Shown one piece after another: positions 32,064 through 63,712 of a DNA stretch of 64,000 nt. The first letter of the stretch is position 1. Every line of letters starts with the position of its first letter. Made by a program: the position numbers and the translations under genes. The DNA is taken from positions 186,001 through 250,000 of IMG/VR virus record IMGVR_UViG_3300017991_000048, one strand, 5' to 3'. The notes beneath the pieces were generated by a model. The model was not told the origin of the DNA and searched no databases. It saw only the letters and a program-made list of their open reading frames with translations.

Positions 32064-32231
32064 CTAACTACCGTACTGAAGCTTTTCCAGCTTCCGTTTT
32101 AGACCTGAAATCTCCGCTTTGGTTGCAGCGATCGCAAGTTCACATACTTCTTTCATTCGTTTATTGATTTCGAAATCCCGTTTTTCCCATTCGGGTTGGG
32201 GTTTCTCTTCTTGCTCTTTCTCTTCTTGCAT
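32064..32231 (-). CDS. small coiled-coil protein (55 aa)
   Basis: MQEEKEQEEKPQPEWEKRDFEINKRMKEVCELAIAATKAEISGLKRKLEKLQYGS*. TAATG overlap upstream; its TAG abuts the next ATG. Confidence 0.65.
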   Translation of the reverse strand: MQEEKEQEEKPQPEWEKRDFEINKRMKEVCELAIAATKAEISGLKRKLEKLQYGS

Positions 32232-39912: not shown

Positions 39913-39914
39913 TA

Positions 39915-42068
39915 TTAAACACTGCGTATTGTGGCACAACCCATCAAAGGAAGGCCAGTGATCCAGTCCAATGAAGGACTGCCCGGTGGGAGCATCGGTG
40001 TGCCTCTAGACACGCCCAAAGGCGCTACAGGAGCACCCAGAAGAATCTGCGCTGAAGTCAATGTAATCGCGGCGGGTGCTGTCAAAGTCATAGCCGCTCC
40101 TGCTGTCAAACTCAGAGCCAAACCCGCTGACACTGATATCGCCCCGGCTGCTGCTGCCAAAGACAAAGCCCCACTTGCTGTTGAAATCGAAATGGCACCG
40201 GAGCCCACAGCCACCGAATATGCCCCGGCTGGTACATTTGTGGTCATTGCACCACTGGCGACAGTTGTGGTTTTAGCTCCCACAGTTAGAGTTTCTGTAA
40301 CACCTCCTGCCAAAACAGTTGTAACCCTACCCCCAAGCACAATAGTTTCCAAAACCTGCAACGCATAGTGATATTGGGTCTTTCCCGATACGAGCACGTC
40401 ATAACCACCCGCATTTACCCCCATCCCCGATTGAGCATTGACGCTGAAACGGTCGGCCAAAACCCCATAACCACCGTTTACAGTTGTAGCTTTGGCTCCA
40501 GCTACATTTTCTATGCTGTCACCAGCCGCAAACGCCTCTCGATTACCCTGGAGATTCTCGCTGTAGGCTACATTGTTATTGTCCTGGACGCCTTGAGCTT
40601 CAATTACATACGATGAATGAGTGCGAAACTGTAAACCTGCTCCCGAAGCTGCACCACGAAAGTCAAAAACCGCTCCCCCTTCCAATGTCAAATGCAGAGC
40701 GATGTTGTCCGGGGTGGCGGCTCCAAGCTGCATCTTGAGAGCCCCTTCCATGTTGATCTCGGCTGACACGTTTTTTGTGCCAGAGGCGTACTTCTCAACG
40801 CGAGACCCCGGAATATTCAAAAACAGCTTGCCTTGCTTGGAGACAGCCGCAGCAAAAACGCTTGTCGTATCTGAACGTCCAGCAGGGCTTGGCGGTGGAA
40901 CCAGACGGAAAAGGTAAGCTCCCGCTGTGGTATACGATTCCATGTCATCAAGAGGTGATCTTGGGATAGCTTCCACCGCAAAGTTAGATTTCGCTGTAGC
41001 CTGGAAGTCTTCGAAAATCTTGGGACGAAGTAGCTGCCCGTACTGCTGTAGCCCGGTGCTAGAAGAAGTATCATTTCCAACCACAGTACCCAACACACGT
41101 TCAATGTAGACGGGGTTCCGATCCATCTGAAACCCATCAATTTCTTCCCGCACTTCTTGAGTCAAATCCGTCAAGTGGGTCAACTCAACTCGGTCTTCTG
41201 TGTAAACCTCTGCTGGTGTCTTCGGGTTCTCAAAGTTTACGCCAGGAGACTCAGCAGGGTAAAAAGCCTGACGCCCGTTAGAAAATACAATTGGGGGAAA
41301 CTCTGTCTCATTGTTAATACTACTTATGACCGTGGTGCCGTCATCGTCAACCGTAAAACGTTTGAGAGTTGCACCTCCGAAGTAACGATCCTCAGAGGTC
41401 TTGAGAGTCTTGCCCTCCTTGAAAATATCAGGCGGTAGATAAAGCCCACTTCTTCGTGTCGGACCGGAGGTGCGAAACACCCCAGAATCACTTTCCACAC
41501 GGTGGATGGTTTGAGACACCAGAGTTCTATCCTCATCTCGAAGCTCGAAAAGGTCACCCGCTCTATTAACTATCTTGACGTCTTTTGACAGAGCGAACTC
41601 AGCCCCAGAGGACGACATACCCCCTACGTCGCCCGGTTGGAGACGCAAACGCTTGTAACGGGTCTGAGGTGAAAAAACTTTACTATATAAATCTGCGTCT
41701 TCCGGATCGATCCCAGATGGGTCAGAAGTGGCCAATGGGTCAAAACGCATGGCCGTTCGTTTGCCAACCGGGATATACCCCAGAATCATAGCCTCGTGGA
41801 GTTGCTTATGTCTTCTACGGTAGCCAATGATTACCATCGAGTTGACCTCTGGGACACCGCCCCAAAAGCTACGTGGGCCTGCCTGAGCTTGAGTCAGATC
41901 AATCTCAAATCTTTCACCGCCCCCTGTGAGCACTCTTATATCGCACTTCAACTCTATTTCATCGACACGAGTTATCATACCGAGTTTGAGCCCCCAAGGG
42001 TCGCCCATATCGGTAAACTCAGCCCCTGGCACATAACCGGAAGGATTCTTTGGAGTAAAATCAGCCAT
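39915..42068 (-). CDS. central spike protein (gp5/gpV-like)
   Basis: N-terminal OB-fold-like GMITRVD...GGVPEVNSMVIIGY; C-terminal Ala/Gly/Thr beta-helix repeats; follows the hub. Confidence 0.75.
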   Translation of the reverse strand: MADFTPKNPSGYVPGAEFTDMGDPWGLKLGMITRVDEIELKCDIRVLTGGGERFEIDLTQAQAGPRSFWGGVPEVNSMVIIGYRRRHKQLHEAMILGYIPVGKRTAMRFDPLATSDPSGIDPEDADLYSKVFSPQTRYKRLRLQPGDVGGMSSSGAEFALSKDVKIVNRAGDLFELRDEDRTLVSQTIHRVESDSGVFRTSGPTRRSGLYLPPDIFKEGKTLKTSEDRYFGGATLKRFTVDDDGTTVISSINNETEFPPIVFSNGRQAFYPAESPGVNFENPKTPAEVYTEDRVELTHLTDLTQEVREEIDGFQMDRNPVYIERVLGTVVGNDTSSSTGLQQYGQLLRPKIFEDFQATAKSNFAVEAIPRSPLDDMESYTTAGAYLFRLVPPPSPAGRSDTTSVFAAAVSKQGKLFLNIPGSRVEKYASGTKNVSAEINMEGALKMQLGAATPDNIALHLTLEGGAVFDFRGAASGAGLQFRTHSSYVIEAQGVQDNNNVAYSENLQGNREAFAAGDSIENVAGAKATTVNGGYGVLADRFSVNAQSGMGVNAGGYDVLVSGKTQYHYALQVLETIVLGGRVTTVLAGGVTETLTVGAKTTTVASGAMTTNVPAGAYSVAVGSGAISISTASGALSLAAAAGAISVSAGLALSLTAGAAMTLTAPAAITLTSAQILLGAPVAPLGVSRGTPMLPPGSPSLDWITGLPLMGCATIRSV

Positions 42069-48038: not shown

Positions 48039-51000
48039 TCACCGAAGACGTTTATTACGCTCAAATTCAGCCGCGCCTTCTACCACACGGGCAGTAATAA
48101 AGCGGCTAAGGTCACCTCTCAAAGCCAGTTCAACCTTCACGTTACCGGCTCGACCGCCGCCAGCGGGTATAATTCTTTCTCCCACGCCTATCGGGGTCCA
48201 GCCTTCTCCGGGTGGCAACCGGGCAACATTAGCCTGACCATTAACTATACTGGTAACAAGACCACCGGCTTGCTTGGGTTCGGCTGTGGTGACCTTTGTC
48301 TTCTTCTTGCCACCGCCCAATAGCTCTGCGGCAATTCCTGTTGGAGCAACTCCCTTTTCCGTAGCGCCTTTGACTAACTTTTCCCCTATATTCTCAGGCG
48401 TCCAGGCTCCTGTTTTTAGCCCTTTCGCTACGTCTGCGCCCTCCAACTGCGAATACATATAATATTCAAAAAGTCCTGTACGGATAGCATCGAGTGTTGA
48501 GGACGTGACAGCTTTTGTGTAGCCGCTTGTGGGCTTGCCTTGCACCACACCCTTTTTAAGAACCTTTGTAGTTTCTTTGGCCGCTTTCGTCGCTTCTTTT
48601 TGCTCCCCCTCTGTAGGCGGATCTTTGAGTTTGGGCTGTTCGGTAATTTCTGCTTTGGCTTTAGCCTTGGCTTCAGCTTTTGCTTCAGGTGTTGCCCCTT
48701 TTATCCCGGCCTTCTCTTGAAGGGCTCCCATCTTTTTGTACCGCTTCAGCGCTTCTTCAGGCGCAACATCGTATATCCCTGTGCCACCTACCCCTTCTTT
48801 TGTAATTTCATCCTCAGCCCATATTATTTCATCTAACAGCAGCTTTTGCTTATGCAGGGCCTCTATTTCTTCCTTACCCTTAGCCGTCTTTATCTTCTTT
48901 ATTATTTCCTCTCTTTCCTCCTCTGCTGCCTTTACGCCTTCTAACAATTTTTGACCAGCCGTGGCGACAATCTTATTTCTAGCTTCCCATATATTTCCTT
49001 CGGCGTCTGTGATAGCTTTCATAACTTCCGGATCTCTTAGTCCCTGAGCTTGCATCTCAAAACGCTTTTCCCGCACTCTCTTTTCTTTTTCGGCACTGTC
49101 ACCAAACGGAAGAGCCTTCCAAACATCTAGCACTGAATCCCAAACCCCCTTTAGTGTGTTGTAAATCTCGTTCATTAAAATATCGACGATCATTCCTAGC
49201 TTATCTACTATACTAACCTGATGTTCAGCTATCTTCTTTTGGAAGTTTATTTGTTTTTCACCTCCTTGTAATAATTCTTGTTGATCAGCAGACAAAGCGT
49301 TCCAAGTTTTCCGCATGTTTTTATCCTCGTCGAATATATCCTTTAGTTGCTCCAGTAGATCCCCTTTCGTCATGTCCACGCCTAGCTTTTCCAAAGCTAG
49401 TTTAGTTTTTTCATCGAACTCACCCCCTTTTGCGATTCCTTCTTCAGTGGCATTGAGTAATTCTTGTTGGTAAGTCATAAGACCTAGCTGTAGCTTTTGA
49501 AAACCTCGAATTTCTTGGACTGTGGCGATCCCTGTCGCCTCTACAGCAGCAAGTTGGCGTCCGCTAAGTTCTTCTAACCGTTTACCGTTAAACATCTTCA
49601 TCGACTCCGCCTGTGCCATCTGTATCTTGCCCATCGGACTTAATTGATCGAGAATTGCAGCCGTATTGATTGCCCCTCCTTTGGCGAGTTTTTGCTGCAT
49701 ATTTGCTGCATCTTGAATAGCCTCTACCATTCCCCCAGTAACCTTCTCCCGATGGTCAGCCGTCCATTTTGCAATCTCCTTTGGATTTGCCCTTTCAATC
49801 ATCTCACGGATTTCTTTAGCAGACTGTCCTGTCTGATTCGCGATATCAGCACTTAATCCTTCTAACCGCGCCCCTAAATCTGCCTGGGCCACGCCTTTAG
49901 CCTTCCCCGGTCCAGCCATCATAACGTGCCTTACATTCTCTAGAACACCACCAGCAAACTTACCTGTAACGGATTGCATAAACTTCATCGCGTTTCTAGG
50001 CTGCATGGTCTTTCCGAGAACTCCCATTACTTTTGTCAAATCTGCCATGCGAAGTGTGAACAATGACAAATCTGCCGAAAAGCTTCTGACCATCCCAAAA
50101 AACTTATTGGACGCCATACCAGCTTCTTCGGCTCCCCTCGTTATTGACTGAAAACCAGCTTGGACTGAATCTAACCCCATACCCATTTCAGCCATCATCT
50201 CGCCTTGCAGAAGCGTGGTTTCTTGCAAACTCACACCGAAGGCTCGTGAGTAAGCCACTGACATTTGGATTACTTTCGCATGTTCTGTAGCATATCCAGT
50301 GGCGCGTTTTGTCTCATCCCCCAAACGCTCCAGAGTTACGCCTTCATTCGTAAGAGCGGCGATAAACTGCGCGGCTGTGTCTCTGGAAATGCCCCACTGG
50401 ACATTACTTAAATTCATTGCACCTTCACGCACATCCTTGAGCGTTTGTTCTAATTCTGCTGACGCGGCATCCGCATCTCCCATATTACGAGCTAAAAGAG
50501 CTGATGTACTGGCCGTCTCTAATATTCTCTTGTGGAAATCTTTTGCAGCCGCCTCCGTATCCATGAAGAGCTTTATAAGGCCCATTATTGCGGAACTCAC
50601 CAAGCCAATTATAGGGCCGAGTTTTCCAAGCACCTTTATCACAGGCATCAGCGCTTTACCCATCCCTGCGATTCCTTTGACTGCGGCTCCCCCGGCCCCG
50701 GCTTTCCCTGCTGTAGGTATCAGGCTCATCTTCTTGACCCCTTTACCCATCTTTCTAAAAGCGCCCGTTAGTCCTTTGCCTAATAAGTCGCTGCCTTCAT
50801 CAAGAGCGCTCTTAAAATCTCGCCCCATAAATGCCGAAAGAGGCTTAACAAGCGTCTCGCCGCCTTCACGGGCAGCGGCTGCCAAGAGTTTAAGGTTGGG
50901 GCCACCGCCTTTAACTTGTTCCATTCCTTTCCTAACAGCATCTCGCCGTTTAACAAGCTCTTCTTTCTCTTTCTCCTTCGCCCTTATAGCTATCGTTTTT

Positions 51001-51389
51001 TCTTTTGCCAGATCCCTTTGTAACCTAATCCTTTGTTTAATCTCCTCTTTTTCATCCCCGCCTGCTGCCGCCGCCCGTTTGTTTAACTCGCCCAAAACCC
51101 TTTCCGTGTCCATTAACCCCTTTTTCATATCCCCGATAGCGTTAGTCGTCTCTCCTATGGCTGCTCGAATATTACCGTAAACCTTGGCCTGCTTTGCAAG
51201 AATCGGACCTAAGATCTTTGTCGTCTTTGTCGCGTGTATATACTTACCAATAGCGGTGTTGACCTGTTCTTCGCTCTTTTTGATAAGACCAAAGCGCTTG
51301 GACAATTCACTCTGAAACCGCTTGGACTCTTTGAGTGCAGCACTTGGGTCAATCCCTATCTTTACAGTTACGACTTCTTCTTCAGCCAT
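48039..51389 (-). CDS. tape measure protein
   Basis: 1116 aa, helical and Ala/Gly/Lys/Glu-rich with a hydrophobic segment; sits between chaperones and baseplate genes. Confidence 0.8.
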   Translation of the reverse strand: MAEEEVVTVKIGIDPSAALKESKRFQSELSKRFGLIKKSEEQVNTAIGKYIHATKTTKILGPILAKQAKVYGNIRAAIGETTNAIGDMKKGLMDTERVLGELNKRAAAAGGDEKEEIKQRIRLQRDLAKEKTIAIRAKEKEKEELVKRRDAVRKGMEQVKGGGPNLKLLAAAAREGGETLVKPLSAFMGRDFKSALDEGSDLLGKGLTGAFRKMGKGVKKMSLIPTAGKAGAGGAAVKGIAGMGKALMPVIKVLGKLGPIIGLVSSAIMGLIKLFMDTEAAAKDFHKRILETASTSALLARNMGDADAASAELEQTLKDVREGAMNLSNVQWGISRDTAAQFIAALTNEGVTLERLGDETKRATGYATEHAKVIQMSVAYSRAFGVSLQETTLLQGEMMAEMGMGLDSVQAGFQSITRGAEEAGMASNKFFGMVRSFSADLSLFTLRMADLTKVMGVLGKTMQPRNAMKFMQSVTGKFAGGVLENVRHVMMAGPGKAKGVAQADLGARLEGLSADIANQTGQSAKEIREMIERANPKEIAKWTADHREKVTGGMVEAIQDAANMQQKLAKGGAINTAAILDQLSPMGKIQMAQAESMKMFNGKRLEELSGRQLAAVEATGIATVQEIRGFQKLQLGLMTYQQELLNATEEGIAKGGEFDEKTKLALEKLGVDMTKGDLLEQLKDIFDEDKNMRKTWNALSADQQELLQGGEKQINFQKKIAEHQVSIVDKLGMIVDILMNEIYNTLKGVWDSVLDVWKALPFGDSAEKEKRVREKRFEMQAQGLRDPEVMKAITDAEGNIWEARNKIVATAGQKLLEGVKAAEEEREEIIKKIKTAKGKEEIEALHKQKLLLDEIIWAEDEITKEGVGGTGIYDVAPEEALKRYKKMGALQEKAGIKGATPEAKAEAKAKAKAEITEQPKLKDPPTEGEQKEATKAAKETTKVLKKGVVQGKPTSGYTKAVTSSTLDAIRTGLFEYYMYSQLEGADVAKGLKTGAWTPENIGEKLVKGATEKGVAPTGIAAELLGGGKKKTKVTTAEPKQAGGLVTSIVNGQANVARLPPGEGWTPIGVGERIIPAGGGRAGNVKVELALRGDLSRFITARVVEGAAEFERNKRLR

Positions 51390-51402
51390 GCTTTTCTCCT
51401 AC

Positions 51403-52686
51403 TCACTTCCGGAACGGCTTCCCTGGTGGCGTCTGACGTCTGGGCAAAGGGATAGCTTCTGAAGTGTCCCGGTCTGTAGTAGCAATCTCAGTAGAGATTT
51501 CTGGCCCTTTGACGCCCCATTTGTCCAAAAAAGCATCCGTTTTTTCATCCATGGGATGAACTTGCATACGTGCGGCGTTTTGAGCCTCGATTTGCTTTGT
51601 ACGTCGAATTCTCTCTTCTACCTCTTGTGGGCTCAAACCATGTATCTCGGAGCTTCCGACAACATTCTTGTTTCCAAACTGCTCCGCATGAGCTTTTGCC
51701 GCTTCCTGCTGTTGTCTCTGTCTGGCTCTATACTGGTTCTGAATTCGCTTCTCATGCTCTTCGACCACCTTGTCGTGCCAGTCCTGGTCGCCTCTTAGAT
51801 CCTTCTCCAACTGATCCGCCAGTTCCTCAACACTGCGCGGCACCGTAACAACTGCACCGGGGAGTACAGCACTCTTTTCCGGTACTTTCTCCCCAAGCAC
51901 TATTTCCCGTAAAAGCTTGTCTTTCCGTGATATCCGCTCTTCTTTCTCCTTGTTTCTCCGATCAGTGTCCTGGCTGTAAACTTTGGACAAACCCTTCCCG
52001 GCAAAGCATGAGCCGATAAACTTGGCATTTTCCCAGTCCCTCTCATGCTGCTCATTACGGTCTTCTGCCAAATTCAAGGCTCTCCATACCTGTTGTGCCC
52101 AGTTGAGCCCCAAAGCTTGTGTTCCAACGACTCCAGTGACCGCCGTGGATGTAAGATCCAGCCCTTTAAGCTGCATCCAACGGTATCGAGAAGCTGATTC
52201 TGTAGCATAAGCTTCCGTTAGAATGGTCGCACTTGAGGCCCTCCGGTTGATTTCGGAGACGTGCCGAATGATCTTGGCTTTGCCTTGTTTGGGAAGCTCT
52301 GAGAAGGTGTCCGCTATTTTGGGTATCCATTGATCGCGGTCAGCCAAGACATTGACGCCATCGACCATAAACACCTCGTAAGCCAAAAAGATGTCCCAAA
52401 ATCTATGACTTGAGTCCTCTCGCTCCTGTTCCTTGAGAAGCCCTGCAAACCTGAGCAAGTCGAACTCATGGTGGTTCACACTTTTGAAAACAAAGTAGAC
52501 GTTATTAATTTCCGCCGCTACTGTAAGAAACCCACGGAACAGCAGGGGTTCAACGTCCTTGTAAACTTCCGGGTTTACCTCCGGAGCTTGAGGGGGAGTG
52601 ACACGGATATCTTCTTTAGGCTTTCCGTCATACTCACTCTTAAGCCGTCCTTGTTCCAGTTCATAATTTCTAGCTGCATCAGTCAT
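51403..52686 (-). CDS. probable tail assembly chaperone 2
   Basis: Position between chaperone 1 and tape measure; TGATG overlap. Confidence 0.5.
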   Translation of the reverse strand: MTDAARNYELEQGRLKSEYDGKPKEDIRVTPPQAPEVNPEVYKDVEPLLFRGFLTVAAEINNVYFVFKSVNHHEFDLLRFAGLLKEQEREDSSHRFWDIFLAYEVFMVDGVNVLADRDQWIPKIADTFSELPKQGKAKIIRHVSEINRRASSATILTEAYATESASRYRWMQLKGLDLTSTAVTGVVGTQALGLNWAQQVWRALNLAEDRNEQHERDWENAKFIGSCFAGKGLSKVYSQDTDRRNKEKEERISRKDKLLREIVLGEKVPEKSAVLPGAVVTVPRSVEELADQLEKDLRGDQDWHDKVVEEHEKRIQNQYRARQRQQQEAAKAHAEQFGNKNVVGSSEIHGLSPQEVEERIRRTKQIEAQNAARMQVHPMDEKTDAFLDKWGVKGPEISTEIATTDRDTSEAIPLPRRQTPPGKPFRK

Positions 52687-53753
52687 CAAACTTTAGCTGG
52701 CGGCTTAAAGCGCGGGTTGATTCCCGCCGCTGGTGGTCGATCAATAATCTCACTGATCTTTTTCGTGTCCACAGGCTCTTGTTTCCGAAGCTCTGCAACC
52801 TCTTGGTCAGCCGGTCGCTGAACCGGGATTTGCCCATTTCCTTCTTCAACTTTAACACCTAGTGTTCTTCCCGCCTCTGCCTCAAGAGCCGCAATCTTGT
52901 CAGTGCGGCCTTTAGACGTGTCTCCCTCTTGGCTTTGAGACGGGGCTACTCTCCGTGCCTCAATAGCTTGTTCCAGAGTCTGGTGAGGGTCGGTTGGCTC
53001 CGGTGTTGCCCGATTCATGGGTTGTCTCGCCGCCTCTGGCTCAGGCTTCGGTTCGGCTTTGGGCTGCGGCTTAGGTTGTTCAACTTCGGCTTTGGGCTGC
53101 GGCTTAGGTTCCGGTGTCTTGGCGGCATCGTCTTCACGAGCCATCCGGTCTATACGTTCAGTCGCCGCTTTTACTTCCTCAGTGGTGCTTCTCCGCATAA
53201 ACCCTTGCTCTTCCAGGATATGGTCAATGAGAGAGTCTGGCAGATTACCTTCGCTCTCTTTGGCTTCCAGTAATAAGCGGCGATATTTCTCTTCGTCAGT
53301 CTCATCTGGCAGTAAAAACTCGATCCCCTCTTTGGCCTTCCGCTCTGCCATTTCCACCACGTCTAAGAACTTACGGTAAGCTGTGTAAACAGCCTCTTTG
53401 CCCCAAGTGTTCACCACATGCTTGAGCAGGTATGAGTGAAGTTCTGTTTTAACAATGCGTGTTCCCCCTGGATTCTTGGGGTCCGGTTCTTCCTCTTCGA
53501 TATACTTAACACCTTGCAGGTCCATGCCATTGACCTGGGTGATAGACCGGGCAAGGTGCTCAGTTTGGTAGACATGAAGATACGACACGTCATCAAGCTC
53601 TTCACAAGCCTGTAGAATGGCGACGTACTCTTCAGGGCGTAAGTTACGTAATGTAACTTCGCAGTCCTCTATTATGAACGACTCTTTGATTAGCCCTATA
53701 TCTTTGGCCTTATCAAGAGCCTCGTTGAGTTTCTTCGCTGCTAATGTGCTCAT
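52686..53753 (-). CDS. probable tail assembly chaperone 1
   Basis: Follows the tube gene; VTLRNLRPEE...LARSITQVNG; Pro/Glu/Lys-rich C-terminal half. Confidence 0.6.
   Translation of the reverse strand: MSTLAAKKLNEALDKAKDIGLIKESFIIEDCEVTLRNLRPEEYVAILQACEELDDVSYLHVYQTEHLARSITQVNGMDLQGVKYIEEEEPDPKNPGGTRIVKTELHSYLLKHVVNTWGKEAVYTAYRKFLDVVEMAERKAKEGIEFLLPDETDEEKYRRLLLEAKESEGNLPDSLIDHILEEQGFMRRSTTEEVKAATERIDRMAREDDAAKTPEPKPQPKAEVEQPKPQPKAEPKPEPEAARQPMNRATPEPTDPHQTLEQAIEARRVAPSQSQEGDTSKGRTDKIAALEAEAGRTLGVKVEEGNGQIPVQRPADQEVAELRKQEPVDTKKISEIIDRPPAAGINPRFKPPAKV
53052..53110. repeat. 26-bp exact direct repeat (period 33) encoding PKPQPKAE twice
   Basis: ttcggctttgggctgcggcttaggtt at 53052-53077 and 53085-53110. 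Confidence 0.9.
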
Positions 53754-53913
53754 ATCATCCTCACAAATTGAGGATGACAGCGTTAGAACTCGACGTGATC
53801 TACATTTGAGTCTGGGTTTCTTACCGCGCTACAACAAAATTTACATTTGGTCGGATCTAATCTGATTCACATCTAGTTAACCGCTGTCATCAAAGCGGTC
53901 AGTTAGACCGCTT
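53751..53913 (-). promoter_or_regulatory. candidate cis-regulatory RNA with four mutually exclusive stems, one hiding the RBS
   Basis: Inverted repeats 53906-53913/53893-53900, 53894-53901/53878-53885, 53882-53891/53773-53782 and 53769-53777/53755-53763. Confidence 0.7.
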
Positions 53914-54613
53914 GTATTGTATTACTGCTCTGAGCGAACCGGAGTGAGTAACCACTGCCAGGACCGCCGTTGTCCTCCACCGGAGCAAGTCCAGTGTCGA
54001 TAAATTCGCCGTATTCTGATACACCATCAATAATGTCAGTGACTGTTATGGAGCTAGTCTCAGCTACCACTGCTGTGTCAGAAACGAAACTTGCTGAATA
54101 TGAATTCATCCAACAGCCCTCAAAAAAGGTCAGCAACGCACGAGGGGTTACTATCGGATTATCAGCGTCCGTAGGGCCTGTTGTAACAGTGGCCGCAACG
54201 GATGTACCACTCGGATCTTGGAGAGAAGATAACTCCGAAAAAACCAATTCCTGCTTGATGTCGAAAGGCCAACGGTGGTGCTTCAAGCTCCGGACAAGAC
54301 CATCGATGCCGCCCTTATAACCGAGAATTTGGAACAGATTTGCTGTATACAGCAATGTCTTGTTCACACTCAGAGTCATCGGATCTGTAACATTAGGCAC
54401 TAGCTCAGCGATTTGATCACCGAAGCCCACGCCACGGATCGGATCAATCGTGCGGGACTCGTCAAATGTGAACTCCGAAATCACGCCCAACTGCTGGAGT
54501 CCCTCCGCTCCGACCGTGTAGCCATAAATCTTATTTTTCTGACTCACGGCGGCACGGGTGTTCGGAGCCGTACCCTGCCGGTAGATATAATTAGCTGTAG
54601 TTACGTTCGCCAT
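53903..54613 (-). CDS. tail tube protein
   Basis: GVISEF...ESRTIDPIRGVGFGDQIAELVP, PFDIKQE, FEGCWMNSYS...VAETSSITVTD; strong GGGAG RBS; upstream of chaperones and tape measure. Confidence 0.8.
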   Translation of the reverse strand: MANVTTANYIYRQGTAPNTRAAVSQKNKIYGYTVGAEGLQQLGVISEFTFDESRTIDPIRGVGFGDQIAELVPNVTDPMTLSVNKTLLYTANLFQILGYKGGIDGLVRSLKHHRWPFDIKQELVFSELSSLQDPSGTSVAATVTTGPTDADNPIVTPRALLTFFEGCWMNSYSASFVSDTAVVAETSSITVTDIIDGVSEYGEFIDTGLAPVEDNGGPGSGYSLRFAQSSNTIQAV

Positions 54614-56038: not shown

Positions 56039-59000
56039 TTAATCCCAATCGCCTTCCGGTAAACTCCAGGCATCGTCTTCGAAATCGTAAGCCGCCGTTC
56101 TAACAATTTCCTCTTCGATCATTTCTTCTCCCGGCTCAACGACCTCTTCCTCAACTATGGTTTCGTCTTCGGTCTCACCGGGTCTTTTGACATTCTCGCC
56201 AACGTGAAGACCGGCTTCAGCCACAAATTGACTGACTCCAGCCGGTTTCCCGCCCACAGTAGAAGGACACACAATAGTAAGATTCATCTCTGCCCGTGAT
56301 AAAGCCACATAACCGAGCCGTCTTTCCGATTCTAACTCTTCTTGTAACTCTTCTGGGTCGCGAGGTGGTGCCCCTGGCTTCTTTGGAGGTTCTATGGGGA
56401 ACTTACCTCTTGGCATGGCGACATAACAATTTCGCCACTCTGCTCCTTTGACTGAATGCACGGTTCCAATGTAAACACCGGGCGGAGGTTTTTGTTCCGC
56501 TTCTGGAAGCTCTTTTTGTTTCTCTTCCCACTTATCAATGTCAATCCGCAGTTCCTCAGTCTTGGCAGCATAACGATCCATTTTAGCTTTATAGCCTATT
56601 GGTGTATTTGGATCGGCAATCAAGTCATCGGGGTCTGTTGGATCTTTTTCCATTAGTTTATATAAGAAACTAACATTCCCCAGATTTTCTTCCTCTTCAT
56701 CCTCATCGTCCTTCGCATCGTCATCCTCATCAGAGATGCTATCTCTGATAGTAGCCTGAAGGCTCTCACGGAAAGACTGCTCTACGTACTTGATGTCGCC
56801 AGTTCCAGGCTCAACTATTGTCGTTGTCCCTCTCAACATAAGGATTTCGTCAAAAAGATCTCTCGTTGTATAGTCGGGGTCCATCGCGTTAGCTTTCATT
56901 TCAGCTACCGCATCACGCATTTCCTGGAGAGCCCTCACAGCCTTTCGCCATAACCCTCCTTTTTTACCCAAAGCTCCAGCCAAGATACCTAAAAATTCAT
57001 CGTCAGCTAAAGCGGCAAGAGGGTTTATTGTTTTAACATCTTGGCCTGTCTCGGTAGCCCACTTTTTAAGCGCATACTTAACTCCGTTCGGTCCTTTATC
57101 CCCAGTGAGGAAAAAACGGTTTGGTTTGTTTATGACCTCCCCCAAGGCTTCTTGCATTTTGGCAAAGTCATTACCTATAGCAAGATCAACATACCCCAAC
57201 ACCGCCTTTGTCTCTGGTGAGCCCAAAAAGCTTGAGGTGCCTTTACGGGCGTAAGGAACGCCGCGAATAATACAGGCTGTCTCGTAAGCGTGTTGTTCCT
57301 TATTTGTCCGGGTAAGAATGGCATTATCACTTACGTCAGCACCCGCTACCATGTCGCCTTTGATCTTCTCTACGACATCTAAAGCAGCTTGCGCCTCATC
57401 TCCGGGAGTTATGACATCAAGAGTCGCAACTCCTTTTTGCGCCCCTGGACGCGGAACGGACTTCATCGGGATCTGCTTTGTGTTATGATCAATTAACGTA
57501 TTGGCGGCTTCAACGATTTCTGGCTCACACCGATAATTAGTCCGGATAAATTTGGTTTCCCAACTCTTTTCTTCGTCGTCGTTCAACTCCGTAAACATAT
57601 CCGGACGCGCCCCGCGAAAACCATAAATACTATTTGATGAAAGAACCCCACCACCAAAAAAGTTAGAAGCATCGTTTATATCAAGATCAAGAAAGGTGTC
57701 TTCTACTTGTTCAACCTTCACAACTTGGTCTAAAACTAACTCACCGTCATCTATAACAGCCACCGACATACCTGGAAACAAAGCTGTTGCTGTGATCTTC
57801 CTAAGAGGTAGTTCATTCGCTACTGACAAACGATGTGATAAATTAAAACCTGTTACATCTTGTAGAGTTTCTGCAAACTCTAAACCTTCTCGATAATTTG
57901 TAAACCATTTACGAATTCTGCGTCTATTCTGACCAAAAAGCTTAAATTCAACTTCTACTTTATCGTCTAACGCCTCGTCTTGATCCCATTCAAGAGTTAC
58001 TTGAGTGCCTTTCGGCCCATGAGCAATAAGCTGGATCGTGCGAGACGCAAGAAGGCGGGAGTTTCGACACATCCAATTAGGGTAAGATAACTTAAGCCCT
58101 TTAGCCTCTAACAGCTTGCGTCCGTTTTCACCAAACTCTTTATAAACCGCTGCAATCTTTTCAACTGGAAATGTTCGATTCCACTCACTATGATATACCG
58201 CAGTTGGTATCTGGTAGCGCAATGAATAAAGAGCTTCTGCCGTATAAGCCTCTTCTTTAGAATTATAAATACCAAGAATCCAAAGACGTTCTGCTCTTTC
58301 TGTTTGTGGTCTTTGTCCATAGAGAAGACGAGAATCTTTCTCGCAAAAACCCTTATTTGTAACCCCGATCCGAAAACCTAAATCTCGTCGATGCATCAAA
58401 TAAAGAAGATGCTGCTCCTCTTTTAGCAATGGGTCAGAGGCCCAAATTTTATGATTTGGACTCATCGTGAGAACACGACCACCTTCTGTGGTCATTTTAA
58501 ATCCATTACTCCAATTAGATGATACAATGTGTTTAACTTGCTGAGGGGTAATCCCACCATTTCGATAAGCTAAAACTTCATCCCCCTCACAAAGATCCTT
58601 TGCCGCCTTTTCACCAGAAGGGGTAAGTATAGGAGTGTCAGAGGCCACACACTGCTTGTCATCCCCTACGATCCATAAAGACTTCCCATCACTGCCGTCT
58701 GTAACCTTACCCGCTATCTGGGAGATGACAGAATACTGGACAGCATTAAGGTCTTGAGCCTCATCAACAATGACATGATCAAACATGTCCTGTACGGTTT
58801 TACGGACACCAGCGTCTCGTTTCAGAATGTTATCAAAAATAGCTAACTGATCATCAAAGTCGCCCAAACGTTTAGCCTTACTACCGGCACCCCTGGACAT
58901 AAAATTTTCATACGCTTTGGAACGACAGGGCGGCTCCCAACCGGGAATGGCTCCCTTCACTCCTTCATACATCTCATACCAGTCTGCATGGTCGGCCTGT

Positions 59001-60346
59001 TCCTGAGTTTTAGCTAGCTCTTTAGCCTCTGCCGGGGTTATTCTATTACCTTTCCATTTTGACTTTGCTAAATTGGCGTCCTTGATTCTCGGTACTTTTC
59101 TTTCCGCTGAAGTGTTTGCTGGAAAACACTGTTGCCACATATTTTGAACAACTCTGGCCACTGAAGTACCTTTTCCAGTGAACCCTCGATTCATGGCCAG
59201 TTTCTCTGTTTTTGTACCAAACTTCTCTATAAAACTACGAAACAGCGAATGGGTAGTTCCAGCAAACATCTGCTTCAACGTGTCAGTGCTTGTCAGTCTG
59301 GCAATTTTCCGTTTAAGTTCATTAGCCGCCTTGGTATTGAAACTGGTTACCAAAATCCGACTCGGACTGACGCCTCTGTCCTTAACCAAATATTCGACTC
59401 TATGAACAACAGTACGGCTCTTCCCTGATCCTGCTCCAGCAGCCACCAGGACACGTCCATCAGTCACTGACGCTGCATACTGTTCAGGGTCTAAATCTCT
59501 CAAAGGAGCCGGTCGATTATTCGGACTGGAAGGATCAGTTGTAACGGACACCGCAGCCGCTGTAGCAATACCTACAACCTCAGACTTTGTTGGCGGCTCA
59601 TCTACTTCCCCGGATACCGCCATGGCTCTCTCGGCAGCGTCTTGAGCTTTTTCTTGCACATCCAGCAGACGTTCATTCTTTTCGGCTTCAGCATTTAGAT
59701 GATCTTCTGAAGCGGCCTCAGCGCCAGTTTCTTTGGCTCTCGCTGTAACTATAGGCTGAACATCGTCATCAGTCTCATCCGATGCGACTGCCACCGCATT
59801 CTGAAAAGTGCCAGACCCGGCTGTCTCTGCCGCTTTATCAATCCAGCCACGAAGCCTTATGTTCTTAAGGGGGATAACGGCGAACTTGTCAAGAGCGGCA
59901 TCAGCGTCCGCCTCATCAGCCGCTGCCATAGCTGCCCTCATCTCTCGCAGCGCTTTGTTGGACCTAAAAATCTTTCTCATGGTGGACGCGCCACCCTGAC
60001 GAAGAGCGATTTTCATCTGAAGACTACGCTTGCCCAAAGTTGTAGAGTTAGAAGGCAGAAAGCGAAACGCTTTGTCCATTATCTTTCTCTGGCTACTTGT
60101 CGGCATGGAATCGCCCAAGAAAGCTTGAATAACACCTAAATGCTGACGATCGGCCATTCTAACAAGCGTTAGACCCTTACGGATTAAGTCATCGTCGGAT
60201 TCCGAACCCGTCGCTTCTTCGAGGTAACGTGAGTATGTTTCCAGTGCGAGCAGGAATACAACGTACTCAGCAATTTCTAACTCGCCAATATCCTCATCGT
60301 CCACACCGACAGCGGCCTCGACAACACGCTTCGCAGAAATTGTCAT
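56039..60346 (-). CDS. uvrD: UvrD/PcrA/Rep SF1 helicase, intein-containing, with N-terminal extension
   Basis: AGAGSGKS, SFNTKAANEL, VDEAQD, VGDDKQ|SIYGFRGA, NYRC, TVHSVKGAEW, ERRLGYVALSRA. AGGAG RBS favours ATG 60346. Confidence 0.92.
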   Translation of the reverse strand: MTISAKRVVEAAVGVDDEDIGELEIAEYVVFLLALETYSRYLEEATGSESDDDLIRKGLTLVRMADRQHLGVIQAFLGDSMPTSSQRKIMDKAFRFLPSNSTTLGKRSLQMKIALRQGGASTMRKIFRSNKALREMRAAMAAADEADADAALDKFAVIPLKNIRLRGWIDKAAETAGSGTFQNAVAVASDETDDDVQPIVTARAKETGAEAASEDHLNAEAEKNERLLDVQEKAQDAAERAMAVSGEVDEPPTKSEVVGIATAAAVSVTTDPSSPNNRPAPLRDLDPEQYAASVTDGRVLVAAGAGSGKSRTVVHRVEYLVKDRGVSPSRILVTSFNTKAANELKRKIARLTSTDTLKQMFAGTTHSLFRSFIEKFGTKTEKLAMNRGFTGKGTSVARVVQNMWQQCFPANTSAERKVPRIKDANLAKSKWKGNRITPAEAKELAKTQEQADHADWYEMYEGVKGAIPGWEPPCRSKAYENFMSRGAGSKAKRLGDFDDQLAIFDNILKRDAGVRKTVQDMFDHVIVDEAQDLNAVQYSVISQIAGKVTDGSDGKSLWIVGDDKQCVASDTPILTPSGEKAAKDLCEGDEVLAYRNGGITPQQVKHIVSSNWSNGFKMTTEGGRVLTMSPNHKIWASDPLLKEEQHLLYLMHRRDLGFRIGVTNKGFCEKDSRLLYGQRPQTERAERLWILGIYNSKEEAYTAEALYSLRYQIPTAVYHSEWNRTFPVEKIAAVYKEFGENGRKLLEAKGLKLSYPNWMCRNSRLLASRTIQLIAHGPKGTQVTLEWDQDEALDDKVEVEFKLFGQNRRRIRKWFTNYREGLEFAETLQDVTGFNLSHRLSVANELPLRKITATALFPGMSVAVIDDGELVLDQVVKVEQVEDTFLDLDINDASNFFGGGVLSSNSIYGFRGARPDMFTELNDDEEKSWETKFIRTNYRCEPEIVEAANTLIDHNTKQIPMKSVPRPGAQKGVATLDVITPGDEAQAALDVVEKIKGDMVAGADVSDNAILTRTNKEQHAYETACIIRGVPYARKGTSSFLGSPETKAVLGYVDLAIGNDFAKMQEALGEVINKPNRFFLTGDKGPNGVKYALKKWATETGQDVKTINPLAALADDEFLGILAGALGKKGGLWRKAVRALQEMRDAVAEMKANAMDPDYTTRDLFDEILMLRGTTTIVEPGTGDIKYVEQSFRESLQATIRDSISDEDDDAKDDEDEEEENLGNVSFLYKLMEKDPTDPDDLIADPNTPIGYKAKMDRYAAKTEELRIDIDKWEEKQKELPEAEQKPPPGVYIGTVHSVKGAEWRNCYVAMPRGKFPIEPPKKPGAPPRDPEELQEELESERRLGYVALSRAEMNLTIVCPSTVGGKPAGVSQFVAEAGLHVGENVKRPGETEDETIVEEEVVEPGEEMIEEEIVRTAAYDFEDDAWSLPEGDWD
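57632..58651 (-). mobile_element. intein (340 aa) in helicase motif III
   Basis: Starts CVASDTPIL after GDDKQ; block B MSPNHKIW; ends FLDLDI...NFFGGGVLSSN before SIYGFRGA. Confidence 0.92.
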
Positions 60347-60385
60347 AATCAATAGCTCCTACTCGTCAATTAAACCAAAGGATAT

Positions 60386-62287: not shown

Positions 62288-63712
62288 TCACGCCCACGCC
62301 GCGTAATCATCAGCTAGTTCCAACAAGAACCTGCCAGCTTCCCCTACTACACGCCCTGGTTTGACATTCAAAGCCGTCATTATCTCCCTGCCATCCAAGA
62401 CAGGCTTTTTGGATACAGGCAAAGGCGACTCTTTGATCCGCTTGATCCGTTCCCTGAGTTGTTTAACATTGTGCTTTTGCGGGATAGATCCTAACTCATC
62501 TGCCTCAGATACATCTAAAGTAGCATCTACGAGTTCGTCACCAAGATCCCGAATAAACTTTCTTATTGCCTTGTCCGTAACTTCGGGACCAAGATAGTGC
62601 GGTCGCATGTGGTGACGGACCATACCCACAACTTTCTTGATAGTAGCAGCATCAAACTTGAGACGGTACAAGATAGCTTTTGCCATCTCCGCTCCCACCT
62701 CTTCATGTCCGTGGAAACTTATAGCACCCTCGACAATCTCTTGTGTCTTAGGTTTACCAACATCATGTAATAAAGCTCCCAGTTGCCCTTCAATAGTCGG
62801 CGGAGCATGACGAAGTACGTTCAGAGTATGTTTATAAACGTCACCCTCTGCGTGGTACTTCTTTCCCTGCTGGACGCCTTGCATGGCTTCGACTTCAGGT
62901 AAGATATACTTTAGCAAGCCCATGAGCTTCATCAGCCTGATGGCACGGTCTAACTTACCGAGTTTCATTACCTTTTTCAGTTCATCCATAATGCGTTCAG
63001 CGGATACTATTTCAATACGAGATGCATTCCGCCGCACTGTCTTTATTACGGACTTAGGTATCTGCCAGTTATATTTACATTGAAAACGGACCAATCGAAT
63101 CATACGAAGGGGATCGTCATTAAGAATCTTGTCCAATGATACTCGCGGGTGCCCTCGTAAGATGCCCTTTTCAATGTCATGCTTACTGGTGCCCGTAAGA
63201 TCGACAACCTCTCCCGATGTCAGATCCTTAAGGAGCATGTTAACGGTAAAGTCCCGCCGTTCAACATCCTCTTCAAGCGTAGCTGGCATTACTTTACGCT
63301 GGCGTGAAGTAGGATCAGTAAACTTTTCCTTCATGGTATCGGCAAACTCTATTACCGCTCCCTTTGTACGATAGGTCTGCCCTTTATATTCTATATTATC
63401 TTTGAATGTAATTTGCCAAATAGGGTACTGCGCTCCCATATGATGGGGCCGGGTTATCTCTCTGGAAAACATATTGTGAAGATAAGTTGTTATCTTCTTG
63501 GCCCCACCCCGCATGTCCACCACGATATCTAAGTCTTTAGCTTCCAGACCTATATATTCGTCACGAATGTACCCTCCGACCGCCATGGCTTTACCGGCAA
63601 ATGGTGTCCCAGGCAAGACACGCTTTAGAAGACGTTCAACTTCTTTTTCCGATATTGAGGCTACGCGGCTGTTTAGGTATCGCTGAACAACTCTGTGGTT
63701 ACAAGTTTCCAA
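62288..63712 (-). CDS. cca: CCA tRNA nucleotidyltransferase (class II) with HD domain
   Basis: VGGYIRD, DLDIVV, EEDVERRDFTVN, DDPLRMIRLVRF, SAERI; HD domain YHAEGDVYKHT...LLHDVGKP...HEEVGA. Start (TTG) uncertain. Confidence 0.9.
   Translation of the reverse strand: METCNHRVVQRYLNSRVASISEKEVERLLKRVLPGTPFAGKAMAVGGYIRDEYIGLEAKDLDIVVDMRGGAKKITTYLHNMFSREITRPHHMGAQYPIWQITFKDNIEYKGQTYRTKGAVIEFADTMKEKFTDPTSRQRKVMPATLEEDVERRDFTVNMLLKDLTSGEVVDLTGTSKHDIEKGILRGHPRVSLDKILNDDPLRMIRLVRFQCKYNWQIPKSVIKTVRRNASRIEIVSAERIMDELKKVMKLGKLDRAIRLMKLMGLLKYILPEVEAMQGVQQGKKYHAEGDVYKHTLNVLRHAPPTIEGQLGALLHDVGKPKTQEIVEGAISFHGHEEVGAEMAKAILYRLKFDAATIKKVVGMVRHHMRPHYLGPEVTDKAIRKFIRDLGDELVDATLDVSEADELGSIPQKHNVKQLRERIKRIKESPLPVSKKPVLDGREIMTALNVKPGRVVGEAGRFLLELADDYAAWA

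What the first reader, a model, noticed from the sequence alone, without database searches (positions are those of the whole stretch)
53751..53913. Four-stem RNA relay linking the tail-tube stop codon to the chaperone RBS
Seen, in mRNA sense. Stem A: AAGCGGUC/GACCGCUU (53913-06/53900-893, 8 bp) with the tube UAA in its loop. Stem B: UGACCGCU/AGCGGUUA (53901-894/53885-878). Stem C: GAUGACAGCG/CGCUGUCAUC (53891-882/53782-773, 10 bp perfect, extendable, enclosing about 100 nt). Stem D: UCAUCCUCA/UGAGGAUGA (53777-769/53763-755, 9 bp perfect, 11 with flanking pairs), burying the GAGGA SD and reaching the AUG. A excludes B, B excludes C and C excludes D, giving two states: A+C (RBS open) or B+D (RBS closed). 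This is the longest non-coding gap in an otherwise tightly packed operon. Inference: an attenuator-like switch in which ribosomes terminating on the tube gene, or a bound protein, set the tube-to-chaperone/tape-measure ratio. I do not recognise it as a known RNA family.
Basis: partly seen in the sequence, partly recalled or inferred. Interest (0 to 1): 0.9.

Follow-up and report, generated by a model that had tools for sequence, protein, structure and literature searches.

The report
Conserved RNA switch before tail-chaperone gene

Summary
All four complementarities are in the sequence as stated. Only two carry evidence of selection. Stem C (long-range, 10 bp, encloses 99 nt) and stem D (hairpin over the Shine-Dalgarno sequence and start codon) recur in at least 33 related giant-phage contigs, always at the same gene junction, with compensatory changes. 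One nucleotide covaries with both of its partners.

C and D compete for 5 nt here and a median of 7 nt across relatives. Blocking C's 5' arm raises the predicted cost of opening the ribosome-binding site in 33 of 33 loci, from a median of 6.1 to 13.5 kcal/mol.

Stem B is negligible thermodynamically (probability about 1e-5) and is not conserved. Stem A is a real local hairpin in this window but is not a family feature. A ribosome parked on the stop codon has no consistent predicted effect.

The enclosed domain carries ARAUG/AGAU repeats at ten times chance, perhaps a binding platform for an unknown factor. Rfam has no match. The upstream protein has a tail-tube fold.

Verdict: a new, well-supported cis-regulatory RNA of a known mechanistic kind. 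Its input signal is unknown.

The parts
53903..54613 (-). Upstream gene, 236 aa, with a tail-tube fold. Stop codon TAA at 53905-53903.
   Evidence: ORF. tblastn matches Bacillus phage G gp180 (E 7e-6) and Tunturiibacter phage Tunturi_5 gp329 (47% identity). AlphaFold2 model has pLDDT 70. Foldseek top 50 PDB hits are tail-tube or Hcp-type proteins (best E 1.5e-6). The best viral hits are phage G gp180 and gp179. PMC8570332 names gp179 and gp180 as tail-tube candidates. Its own RBS is among the most open in the window (opening cost 0.8 kcal/mol).
53893..53913 (-). Stem A: an 8-bp hairpin with the tube stop codon in its 5-nt loop. It is a local hairpin specific to this phage.
   Evidence: Perfect complement. 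Pair probability is about 1. At -12.6 kcal/mol it beats 300 of 300 shuffles of the 3' flank. Across the family, enclosure of the stop codon is not above chance (22 of 32 observed, 24.8 expected). It is followed only by UUUG, so it is not a canonical intrinsic terminator on this strand.
53882..53891 (-). 5' arm of stem C (GAUGACAGCG), the anti-anti-RBS.
   Evidence: Blocking it raises the RBS-opening cost by 8.4 kcal/mol here and by 2.2-11.7 kcal/mol in 33 of 33 loci. That is more than any other window in 32 of 33 loci.
53783..53881 (-). 99-nt domain enclosed by stem C. It carries three copies of a YARAUGURRAUY motif at 53875-53864, 53849-53838 and 53808-53797, plus AGAU repeats. It may be a sensor or binding platform; that role is inferred.
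   Evidence: Three of the five motif matches in the 64-kb window lie here. ARAUG occurs 2.85 times per element against 0.28 in shuffles, and at least twice in 29 of 33 elements. The 5-mers UAGAU and AUGUA are 38-39 times enriched over flanking coding sequence. Domain length varies from about 22 to 110 nt among relatives.
53787..53878 (-). Possible inner helix E: 53878-53867 pairs with 53798-53787, 11 of 12 positions in this window.
   Evidence: It is present in the minimum-energy folds. Across relatives it is weak: 62% of cells pair, no better than column shuffles. Isolated compensatory cases occur in L008 and L013. Treat it as tentative.
53769..53782 (-). Anti-RBS segment. It is the 3' arm of C (53782-53773) and the 5' arm of D (53779-53769). 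The shared nucleotides are 53777-53773.
   Evidence: Alignment column 208 covaries with both partners (AU 9 / GC 3 in C; UA 9 / CG 3 in D). Shared nucleotides have a median of 7, and at least 3 in 32 of 33 loci.
53751..53763 (-). 3' arm of D, holding the Shine-Dalgarno sequence GAGGA (53761-53757) and the start codon ATG (53753-53751) of the downstream gene.
   Evidence: The CATCCTC...GAGGATG hairpin pattern occurs once in the window against 0.01 expected. The local RBS-opening cost of 14.7 kcal/mol is the highest of 38 gene starts in the window (median 5.35).
52686..53753 (-). Downstream gene, 355 aa, a probable tail assembly chaperone. It is the regulated cistron. Its stop codon overlaps the start of the next gene (TGATGA), so the 428-aa gene at 51403-52686 is probably translationally coupled to it.
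   Evidence: ORFs; junction. Three of 29 family members hit PHROG tail-assembly-chaperone families (best E 5e-5). Synteny with phage G runs tube, 158-nt gap, chaperone, tape measure. Downstream lie a 1116-aa gene with strong purine skew, a weak tail-tube-initiator match and an SLT-domain protein.

Best explanation
This is a cis-acting translational switch in the mRNA leader of the gene after the tail-tube gene.

A 10-14-nt anti-RBS segment has two partners. Paired with the ribosome-binding site (stem D), it buries the Shine-Dalgarno sequence and start codon. Paired with a distal upstream segment about 100 nt away (stem C), it leaves only a 4-bp stub on the RBS. The two helices share 5 nt here, so the balance is a graded branch migration rather than an all-or-none flip.

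With the 5' arm available, the RBS is about as accessible as a typical gene in this genome. Without it, the RBS is the most closed in the window. The element therefore sets the output of the probable chaperone, and of the overlapping 428-aa gene, relative to the strongly translated tube gene.

Shown here: the helices, their covariation, their competition, and the predicted energetic effect. Inferred: C forms first during transcription, giving a default-on state. Also inferred: the C-enclosed domain with its conserved ARAUG/AGAU repeats is where an input acts to shift the C/D balance. That input is most likely a phage RNA-binding protein, possibly a product of the tail module, or alternatively a cleavage event. 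Termination on the tube gene is probably not the input.
For: - Location and spread: a covariance model built from 15 spacers finds the element in 33 loci at E<0.01. Every hit is on the sense strand, between the tube-like gene and the next gene. There is one significant hit in the 64-kb window, and none in 715 kb of unrelated viral DNA that shares a 14-mer with the element.
- Stem C on a structure-blind MAFFT alignment: 95.7% of cells pair, against 34-68% when partners are slid. Three pairs show changes on both sides.
- Stem C on the 33-sequence model alignment: 10 of 11 pairs show changes on both sides and 93.8% of cells pair. None of 500 shuffles reaches the whole-structure measures.
- Stem D: 86% of cells pair, and two pairs show changes on both sides. 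One column covaries with both partners.
- Strand: G-U pairs outnumber A-C mismatches 38 to 14, which favours RNA of this strand.
- Competition: the nucleotides shared by C and D number at least 3 in 32 of 33 loci, median 7.
- Energetic effect: blocking the 5' arm raises the RBS-opening cost in 33 of 33 loci, from a median of 6.1 to 13.5 kcal/mol. That exceeds the effect of blocking any other window in 32 of 33 loci.
- Alignment-free test: the anti-RBS has a distal upstream partner better than 95% of dinucleotide shuffles in 35 of 59 loci.
- Within the window: the local RBS cost of 14.7 kcal/mol is the highest of 38 genes. It falls to 4.9 in the full leader, close to the genome median of 5.35.
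- Motif: ARAUG is ten-fold enriched and sits at conserved positions, including the D loop next to the Shine-Dalgarno sequence.
Against: - No experiment has been done. All energetic effects are nearest-neighbour predictions.
- The model-fitted alignment leans towards stem C.
- Some covariation may reflect a few inherited events rather than many independent ones.
- At equilibrium the RBS is still mostly paired (fully open probability 3e-4), so the element could be a fixed attenuator.
- No effector has been identified.
- The enclosed domain varies from about 22 to 110 nt and its inner helix is not supported, so a defined aptamer fold is unlikely.
- The ARAUG motif could be constrained for another reason, for example at the DNA level.
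- About a third of related loci were not matched by the covariance model. Among them, about ten unique loci of another clade (L051, L060-L079) show the same architecture only by eye, and some loci with short spacers seem to have no room for it.
Confidence: 0.6

Rival explanations
1. Ribosomes terminating at the tube stop codon melt stem A. The freed 3' arm forms B, B breaks C, and D closes the RBS. This would give two states, A+C (open) and B+D (closed).
For: All four complementarities and their overlaps exist in this window. The stop codon is in the loop of A, and A is a significant hairpin here. With a long ribosome footprint (+15 nt), the RBS-opening cost in this window rises by 3.2 kcal/mol, because the ribosome touches the base of C.
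Against: B has probability about 1e-5, lying 6.9 kcal/mol above the ensemble. A's 3' arm would be inside the terminating ribosome, and A refolds locally afterwards. Relatives have different A sequences and no B-like pairing. Stop-in-hairpin is not above chance across the family. The distance from the stop codon to C's 5' arm ranges from 2 to 49 nt. The median effect of a terminating ribosome is 0.1 / -0.1 kcal/mol over 33 loci.
Confidence: 0.07
2. A constitutive tuner with no input signal. D alone would silence the gene and C tempers it. The pair fixes a low, robust translation rate and insulates the RBS from upstream sequence context.
For: At equilibrium, partial C and partial D coexist. The resulting cost of 4.9 kcal/mol is close to the genome median. 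No effector or ligand-like fold is evident. The size of the enclosed domain varies widely.
Against: A weaker Shine-Dalgarno sequence would achieve the same result more simply. Maintaining two competing helices with three-way covariation, plus a ten-fold enriched sequence motif at conserved positions, suggests something acts on the element.
Confidence: 0.18
3. Processing-dependent shut-off. An endoribonuclease cuts in the single-stranded, A/U-rich repeats of the enclosed domain. That separates the 5' arm from the anti-RBS, so D closes and the distal cistrons are silenced. The hairpin after the stop codon protects the 3' end of the tube mRNA, giving much tube protein and little chaperone.
For: Removing the 5' arm is predicted to close the RBS in all 33 loci. 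Strong G+C-rich hairpins without U-tracts follow the tube stop codon in many relatives, as in L005, L060, L067, L069 and L080. The repeats are predicted to be largely unpaired in the short forms.
Against: There is no transcript data. The motif is more specific than generic RNase E preferences. Stem C plus helix E reaches about 21 bp only in some clades, so an RNase III site is not a conserved feature.
Confidence: 0.12
4. A metabolite-sensing riboswitch. The C helix would act as P1 of an aptamer, and its 3' strand would be shared with the expression platform.
For: The architecture is that of a translational on-switch: a closing helix whose 3' strand also pairs with the RBS, and conserved nucleotides inside.
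Against: The enclosed domain ranges from about 22 to 110 nt with no conserved internal helices. The conserved nucleotides are short repeats rather than a unique pocket. There is no Rfam match. A tail-assembly gene has no obvious metabolite logic.
Confidence: 0.04
5. A DNA-level feature: inverted repeats of a mobile mini-element, a protein-binding palindrome, or a promoter/operator built from AGAT(C) repeats.
For: Inverted repeats flank about 100 bp of DNA. GATC-containing repeats are present.
Against: G-U pairs outnumber A-C mismatches 38 to 14, so pairing is strand-specific. The compensatory changes preserve pairing rather than sequence. There is a single copy per 64-kb window at a fixed gene junction. 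There is no sigma-70-like promoter in the spacer. The motif is absent from other gene starts in the window.
Confidence: 0.03

Closest known systems
Expression platforms of translational riboswitches, for example the Vibrio vulnificus add adenine riboswitch (from my own knowledge)
   Same: A closing helix (P1-like stem C) and an RBS-sequestering helix compete for one shared strand. When the closing helix forms, the RBS is freed.
   Different: No ligand-binding fold is evident. The enclosed domain varies five-fold in length and is marked by short repeats. There is no Rfam match. The element lies between two cistrons of a phage structural operon.
Alternative mRNA structures of the phage lambda cIII gene, whose balance is shifted by RNase III binding (from my own knowledge)
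   Same: A phage mRNA sits in equilibrium between two conformations, one exposing and one occluding the RBS. A protein sets the balance.
   Different: In cIII the alternative pairings lie around the start codon and early coding region. Here the activating partner is about 100 nt upstream and closes a separate domain. No factor is known for this element.
Phage T4 lysozyme (e), gene 49 and I-TevI mRNAs, where RBS hairpins depend on which transcript carries them (from my own knowledge)
   Same: Translation depends on whether an upstream segment is present in the RNA. A local hairpin buries the RBS.
   Different: In T4 the upstream segment is the inhibitory arm, and late transcripts that lack it are active. 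Here the upstream segment is the activator, and RNAs lacking it are predicted to be silent.
Long-distance interactions in RNA phages, such as the MS2 Min Jou interaction and coat-replicase coupling (from my own knowledge)
   Same: Long-range base pairing governs access to the RBS of the next cistron and sets the ratio of structural to non-structural products.
   Different: In MS2 the long-range pairing represses and is opened by ribosomes translating the upstream gene. Here the long-range pairing activates, lies wholly in non-coding RNA, and shows no conserved link to upstream translation.
Leaders bound at several short motifs by a repressor, such as CsrA GGA sites, T4 RegA operators and T4 gene 32 autoregulation (from my own knowledge)
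   Same: Several copies of a short motif sit in unpaired regions and hairpin loops. One copy lies next to or overlaps the RBS (ARAUG in the D loop and GAUG in the RBS).
   Different: The motif is different. No binding protein has been identified. Here the motifs are embedded in a covarying alternative-pairing scaffold.

Membership tests
Any curated Rfam family | Covariance-model match at or near the family's gathering score | tested here: not met
   The best hit in the region was STnc50 on the opposite strand: 23.8 bits against a gathering score of 55, E 0.36. There were no matches at gathering score in the whole window or in 20 related loci.
RBS-sequestering alternative-pairing translational switch (anti-anti-RBS / anti-RBS / RBS) | The Shine-Dalgarno sequence and/or start codon lies inside a helix | tested here: met
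   Stem D has 9-11 bp over GAGGA and the A of the ATG. A local hairpin pairing the RBS was found in 59 of 63 tested related loci with spacers of at least 70 nt. The opening cost is the highest of 38 genes in the window.
RBS-sequestering alternative-pairing translational switch (anti-anti-RBS / anti-RBS / RBS) | The anti-RBS has a second, mutually exclusive partner | tested here: met
   C and D share 5 nt here, a median of 7 nt across loci, and at least 3 nt in 32 of 33 loci. The distal partner is significant against shuffles in 35 of 59 loci.
RBS-sequestering alternative-pairing translational switch (anti-anti-RBS / anti-RBS / RBS) | Both helices are maintained by compensatory change | tested here: met
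   One column covaries with both partners. Caveat: the controls do not fully correct for phylogeny.
RBS-sequestering alternative-pairing translational switch (anti-anti-RBS / anti-RBS / RBS) | Switching changes translation of the downstream gene | not testable with these tools
   Only predicted: blocking the 5' arm adds 2.2-11.7 kcal/mol to the RBS-opening cost in 33 of 33 loci.
   B has probability about 1e-5. There is no conserved B-like pairing.
   Spacing ranges from 2 to 49 nt. The median effect is 0.1 / -0.1 kcal/mol.
Transcription attenuator (terminator / antiterminator) | One alternative helix is an intrinsic terminator, meaning a G+C-rich stem followed by a U-tract | tested here: not met
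   D is followed by UAUGAGCACA, with no U-run. The scan found no terminator on the minus strand in the spacer.
Metabolite riboswitch | An aptamer with conserved architecture and length | tested here: not met
   The enclosed domain ranges from about 22 to 110 nt. Inner helix E is not supported.
Metabolite riboswitch | Specific ligand binding | not testable with these tools
RNase III processing site (T7 type) | About 20 bp of near-continuous duplex, conserved | tested here: inconclusive
   C plus E reaches about 21 bp with internal loops in this window. E is not conserved and the short forms have only an 11-13-bp C helix.
Tail tube protein family (upstream gene) | Tail-tube / Hcp-like beta-sandwich fold | tested here: met
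   The model has pLDDT 70 and pTM 0.61. All top PDB hits are tube proteins of contractile systems, lambda gpV or Hcp1 (E down to 1.5e-6, target-normalised TM-score up to 0.72). Whether it is the major tube protein or a second tube-like protein is open. Phage G has two such proteins, and no sheath gene lies next to it in this window.
Tail assembly chaperone G/GT pair (downstream gene) | Sequence membership of a chaperone family | tested here: inconclusive
   The window protein has no PHROG or Pfam hit. Three of 29 relatives hit PHROG chaperone families (best E 5e-5). There is no PDB sequence match.
Tail assembly chaperone G/GT pair (downstream gene) | Programmed frameshift into an overlapping extension frame | tested here: not met
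   The next ORF's frame is closed two codons upstream of its ATG. The two genes merely overlap at TGATGA. No fused product was built.

The most novel reading that the evidence does not exclude
The C-closed domain with its ARAUG/AGAU repeats is a sensor for a phage tail-assembly protein, such as free chaperone, tape-measure complex or unassembled tube protein. Tail assembly status would then feed back on translation of the chaperone and the genes coupled to it. That would be an assembly-coupled RNA switch conserved across a large clade of uncultivated giant phages.
Probability: 0.25. Interest if true: 0.75.

Novelty: new member of a known kind. Interest (0 to 1): 0.55.

Why it matters
How long-tailed phages set the large ratio between tube subunits and the few copies of chaperone and tape-measure protein is usually put down to promoter and Shine-Dalgarno strength. 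Here a whole clade of giant phages (contigs of 200-530 kb, known only from metagenomes, apart from distant isolates such as Tunturi_5 and phage G) keeps a dedicated RNA element at exactly that junction.

The element looks better conserved than the protein it precedes. Mean column identity is 56-60% at nucleotide level across the 15 closest spacers. The downstream protein averages 34% at amino-acid level across a wider set of 29 relatives, so the two figures are not strictly comparable.

This gives a concrete, mutable handle on stoichiometry control in virion assembly. It adds a new covariation-supported RNA family for Rfam-type catalogues. It also provides a repeat motif that can be used to look for an RNA-binding regulator in phages whose genes are almost all unannotated.

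Tried and rejected
- Megablast of the region against GenBank phages found no match.
- PHROG and Pfam scans of the four genes around the spacer found nothing.
- The first AlphaFold2 model, from a shallow alignment, failed with pLDDT 36. A deeper alignment from the representative search fixed this.
- RNAalifold found no consensus structure inside stem C. Inner helix E, tested explicitly, was no better than shuffles.
- Stop codon in a hairpin loop as a family feature was rejected by shuffle control.
- Stem B was rejected on energy and on conservation.
- The motif as a general promoter or regulon signal was rejected, because it occurs only in this spacer within the 64-kb window.
- The start-stop mini-ORF idea (AUG followed by a stop codon inside the motif) holds for all three copies in this window. 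By eye it holds for only about half of the copies in relatives, so it was not adopted.
- Gene-60-style bypassing was considered because of the stop codon in a hairpin. It was dropped because the downstream gene has its own conserved start, and the only nearby match to the last sense codon of the tube gene is out of frame.
- A G/GT frameshift between the 355-aa and 428-aa ORFs was rejected.
- An exact 14-mer scan of viral contigs returned only chance hits, with 0 of 80 confirmed by the model.
- A second, broader covariance model could not be built because the calibration forecast exceeded the limit. As a result, another clade (L051, L060-L079) was judged only by eye and by a partial alignment.
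- The literature searches found no earlier description of this element.
Full report
**What is in the sequence.** All genes in this part of the window run on the minus strand. A 236-aa ORF (53903-54613) ends with TAA at 53905-53903. A 149-nt spacer follows, and then a 355-aa ORF starts at ATG 53753.

A, C and D are perfect, and B has one G-U pair. D extends to 11 pairs and reaches the A of the start codon. C encloses 99 nt. C and D share 53777-53773.

The 186-nt RNA folds better than shuffles (MFE -52.2 kcal/mol, z = -3.79). Other large apparent gaps in the window hold small ORFs. The spacer is therefore a real outlier among the tightly packed genes.

**What the window is, and what the flanking genes are.** The window is part of a 398-kb IMG/VR contig (locus L004, 100% identity). 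There is no close relative among GenBank phages.

The 236-aa protein matches:
- a virion structural protein of the 309-kb Tunturiibacter phage Tunturi_5 (47% identity);
- a 485-kb uncultured phage genome;
- more distantly, Bacillus phage G gp180.

[quoted passage not shown] The literature treats them as tail-tube candidates (PMC8570332). A first structure model failed. A model from a deeper alignment reached pLDDT 70. Its best matches in the PDB are all tail-tube or Hcp-type proteins, and in BFVD they are phage G gp180 and gp179. The label 'tail-tube fold' is therefore supported. Whether this is the major tube protein or a second tube-like protein is open.

The 355-aa protein has no family match itself. 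However, 3 of 29 relatives hit PHROG tail-assembly-chaperone families. The genes that follow fit a tail module:
- a 428-aa gene overlapping at TGATGA;
- a purine-skewed 1116-aa gene;
- a weak tail-tube-initiator match;
- an SLT-domain protein.

There is no overlapping extension frame of the G/GT kind.

**Conservation of the spacer.** The search returned 80 related loci (177 candidates confirmed). Most come from contigs of 100-530 kb. The tube-like protein is 51-85% identical across them. In most of these loci a 330-420-aa gene follows after a spacer of 47-245 nt. The downstream protein is much less conserved (34% mean column identity).

A MAFFT alignment of the 15 closest spacers shows invariant blocks, including the two arms of C and the two arms of D. 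RNAalifold recovers C and the inner part of D on its own.

**Covariation.**
- On the structure-blind alignment, stem C has 95.7% of cells paired, against 34-68% when partners are slid by 1-3 columns. Three pairs change on both sides.
- Stem D has 86% of cells paired, and two pairs change on both sides.
- The nucleotide just 5' of CAUCC changes from U to C in three lineages. When it does, both of its partners change from A to G, one in C's 5' arm and one in D's 3' arm. This is what selection on both pairings would produce.

A covariance model built from these spacers finds 33 loci at E<0.01. Every hit is on the sense strand at the same junction, and only one significant hit falls in the window. 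On that alignment, which is fitted to the model, 10 of 11 C pairs show changes on both sides.

G-U pairs outnumber A-C mismatches 38 to 14, pointing to RNA of this strand. The model gave no hit in 715 kb of unrelated viral DNA carrying an exact 14-mer from the element.

In most other clades the 3' arm of D is GAGGAUGG, in which AUG is the start codon itself and a separate AAGGAG serves as the Shine-Dalgarno sequence. A further clade (L051, L060-L079) shows the same three-part layout with an interrupted 16-bp C, judged by eye only.

**Energetics.** In the window RNA:
- A is essentially always formed.
- B has probability about 1e-5.
- Full C and full D each have probability about 0.11.
- The minimum-energy fold splits the shared nucleotides between C and D.
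- Opening the RBS costs 4.9 kcal/mol.

Blocking C's 5' arm raises that cost to 13.4 kcal/mol here. It raises the cost in all 33 loci, from a median of 6.1 to 13.5 kcal/mol. In 32 of 33 loci this exceeds the effect of blocking any other window of equal size, whose median effect is 0.0.

The nucleotides that pair with the 5' arm when the RBS is held open overlap those that pair with the RBS when the 5' arm is blocked. The overlap has a median of 7 nt, and is at least 3 nt in 32 of 33 loci.

An alignment-free test finds a distal partner for the anti-RBS better than 95% of dinucleotide shuffles in 35 of 59 loci.

Among 38 gene starts in the window, the local RBS-opening cost of the 355-aa gene is the highest (14.7 kcal/mol, median 5.35). 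That of the tube-like gene is nearly the lowest (0.8). With its 5' arm the leader is therefore about average. Without it, the leader is the most closed in the window.

- B is negligible in energy and has no counterpart in relatives, whose A sequences differ.
- A is significant in this window (better than 300 of 300 shuffles). Across the family, however, the stop codon is enclosed by a hairpin no more often than in shuffles (22 of 32 observed, 24.8 expected).
- The stop codon lies 2-49 nt from C's 5' arm.
- A modelled ribosome on the stop codon changes the RBS cost by a median of 0.1 / -0.1 kcal/mol. In this window only a long footprint has an effect, and it closes the RBS by touching C directly.
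- D is not followed by a U-tract, so this is not a transcription attenuator.

**The enclosed domain.** Its length varies from about 22 to 110 nt, and no inner helix is supported. It is nonetheless rich in a short motif:
- ARAUG occurs 2.85 times per element, against 0.28 in shuffles.
- Its copies sit at conserved offsets after the 5' arm and in the D loop next to the Shine-Dalgarno sequence.
- UAGAU and AUGUA are 38-39 times enriched over the flanking coding sequence.
- In the window, three of the five matches to the longer motif fall in this spacer.

Repeats of this kind in unpaired RNA next to an RBS are typical of protein-binding leaders. This is my own inference; no binding protein is identified. 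A fixed aptamer is unlikely given the length variation.

**Mechanism proposed.** The shown steps are these:
- The anti-RBS has two selected, competing partners.
- Availability of the distal partner decides, in prediction, whether the RBS is ordinary or tightly shut.

The inferred steps are these:
- The 5' arm and domain are transcribed first, so C can form before the RBS exists. This gives a default-on nascent RNA.
- A factor acting on the repeat-bearing domain, or cleavage within it, then shifts the balance towards D.
- That lowers synthesis of the probable chaperone and of the overlapping next gene, relative to the tube protein.

I put 0.6 on the core claim of a functional C/D translational switch, and about 0.25 on a tail-assembly protein as the input.

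**Comparison with known systems.** No Rfam family matches, whether in the region, the whole window or 20 relatives. The literature searches found no description.

In logic it resembles the expression platform of a translational on-riboswitch and the alternative structures of lambda cIII mRNA. It is the mirror image of the T4 lysozyme and MS2 replicase cases, where the distal element inhibits. I therefore file it as a new RNA family of a known mechanistic kind. The input and the role of the repeats remain unexplained.

Noticed in passing
window 56039-60352 (-): A 1437-aa UvrD/Rep-type helicase is interrupted by an intein-like insert. Hint and intein-splicing domain matches fall at about residues 566-905, between the two helicase halves.
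   Followed up: no
window 38960-39478 and 39475-39939 (-): Two adjacent paralogous genes both match endonuclease VII / HNH-type PHROG families. They sit inside the structural gene block.
   Followed up: no
window 62288-63712 (-): A CCA-adding tRNA nucleotidyltransferase-like gene (PolyA_pol head, RNA-binding and HD domains) is present, although ARAGORN finds no tRNA gene in the 64-kb window.
   Followed up: no
window 52686-52760 (-), and alignment A3: The 355-aa family ends in a nearly invariant C-terminal peptide (PP.AGINPRF+PP) after a variable proline-rich linker. It could be a docking motif for a partner such as the tube or tape-measure protein.
   Followed up: no
window 52684-52689 (-): The stop codon of the 355-aa gene and the start of the 428-aa gene overlap as TGATGA. 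Whatever controls the first gene's RBS probably also controls the second.
   Followed up: partly
window 48039-52689 (-): The 1116-aa and 428-aa genes show strong strand composition skew (GC skew about -0.23 and AT skew -0.22 to -0.27 on the plus strand). That would fit a purine-rich, possibly coiled-coil, tape-measure-like gene, but neither has any family match.
   Followed up: no
L005, L060, L067, L069, L080, L081 at about 3710-3760: Many relatives carry a strong G+C-rich hairpin right after the tube-like stop codon, mostly without a U-tract. These could be 3'-end stabilisers or terminators for a phage polymerase. In this window only the weaker stem A occupies that place.
   Followed up: partly
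window 32064-32230 (-): This apparent 167-nt gap reads as a small Glu/Lys-rich ORF of about 55 codons and shows no excess structure (z = -0.6).
   Followed up: partly
window 53864-53875, 53838-53849, 53797-53808 (-): In all three motif copies in this window the AUG is followed directly by a stop codon (AUGUGA, AUGUAA, AUGUAG). Another clade has tandem AUGUAR AUGUAR. By eye only about half of the copies in relatives keep this, and none has a Shine-Dalgarno sequence. It is left unexplained.
   Followed up: partly
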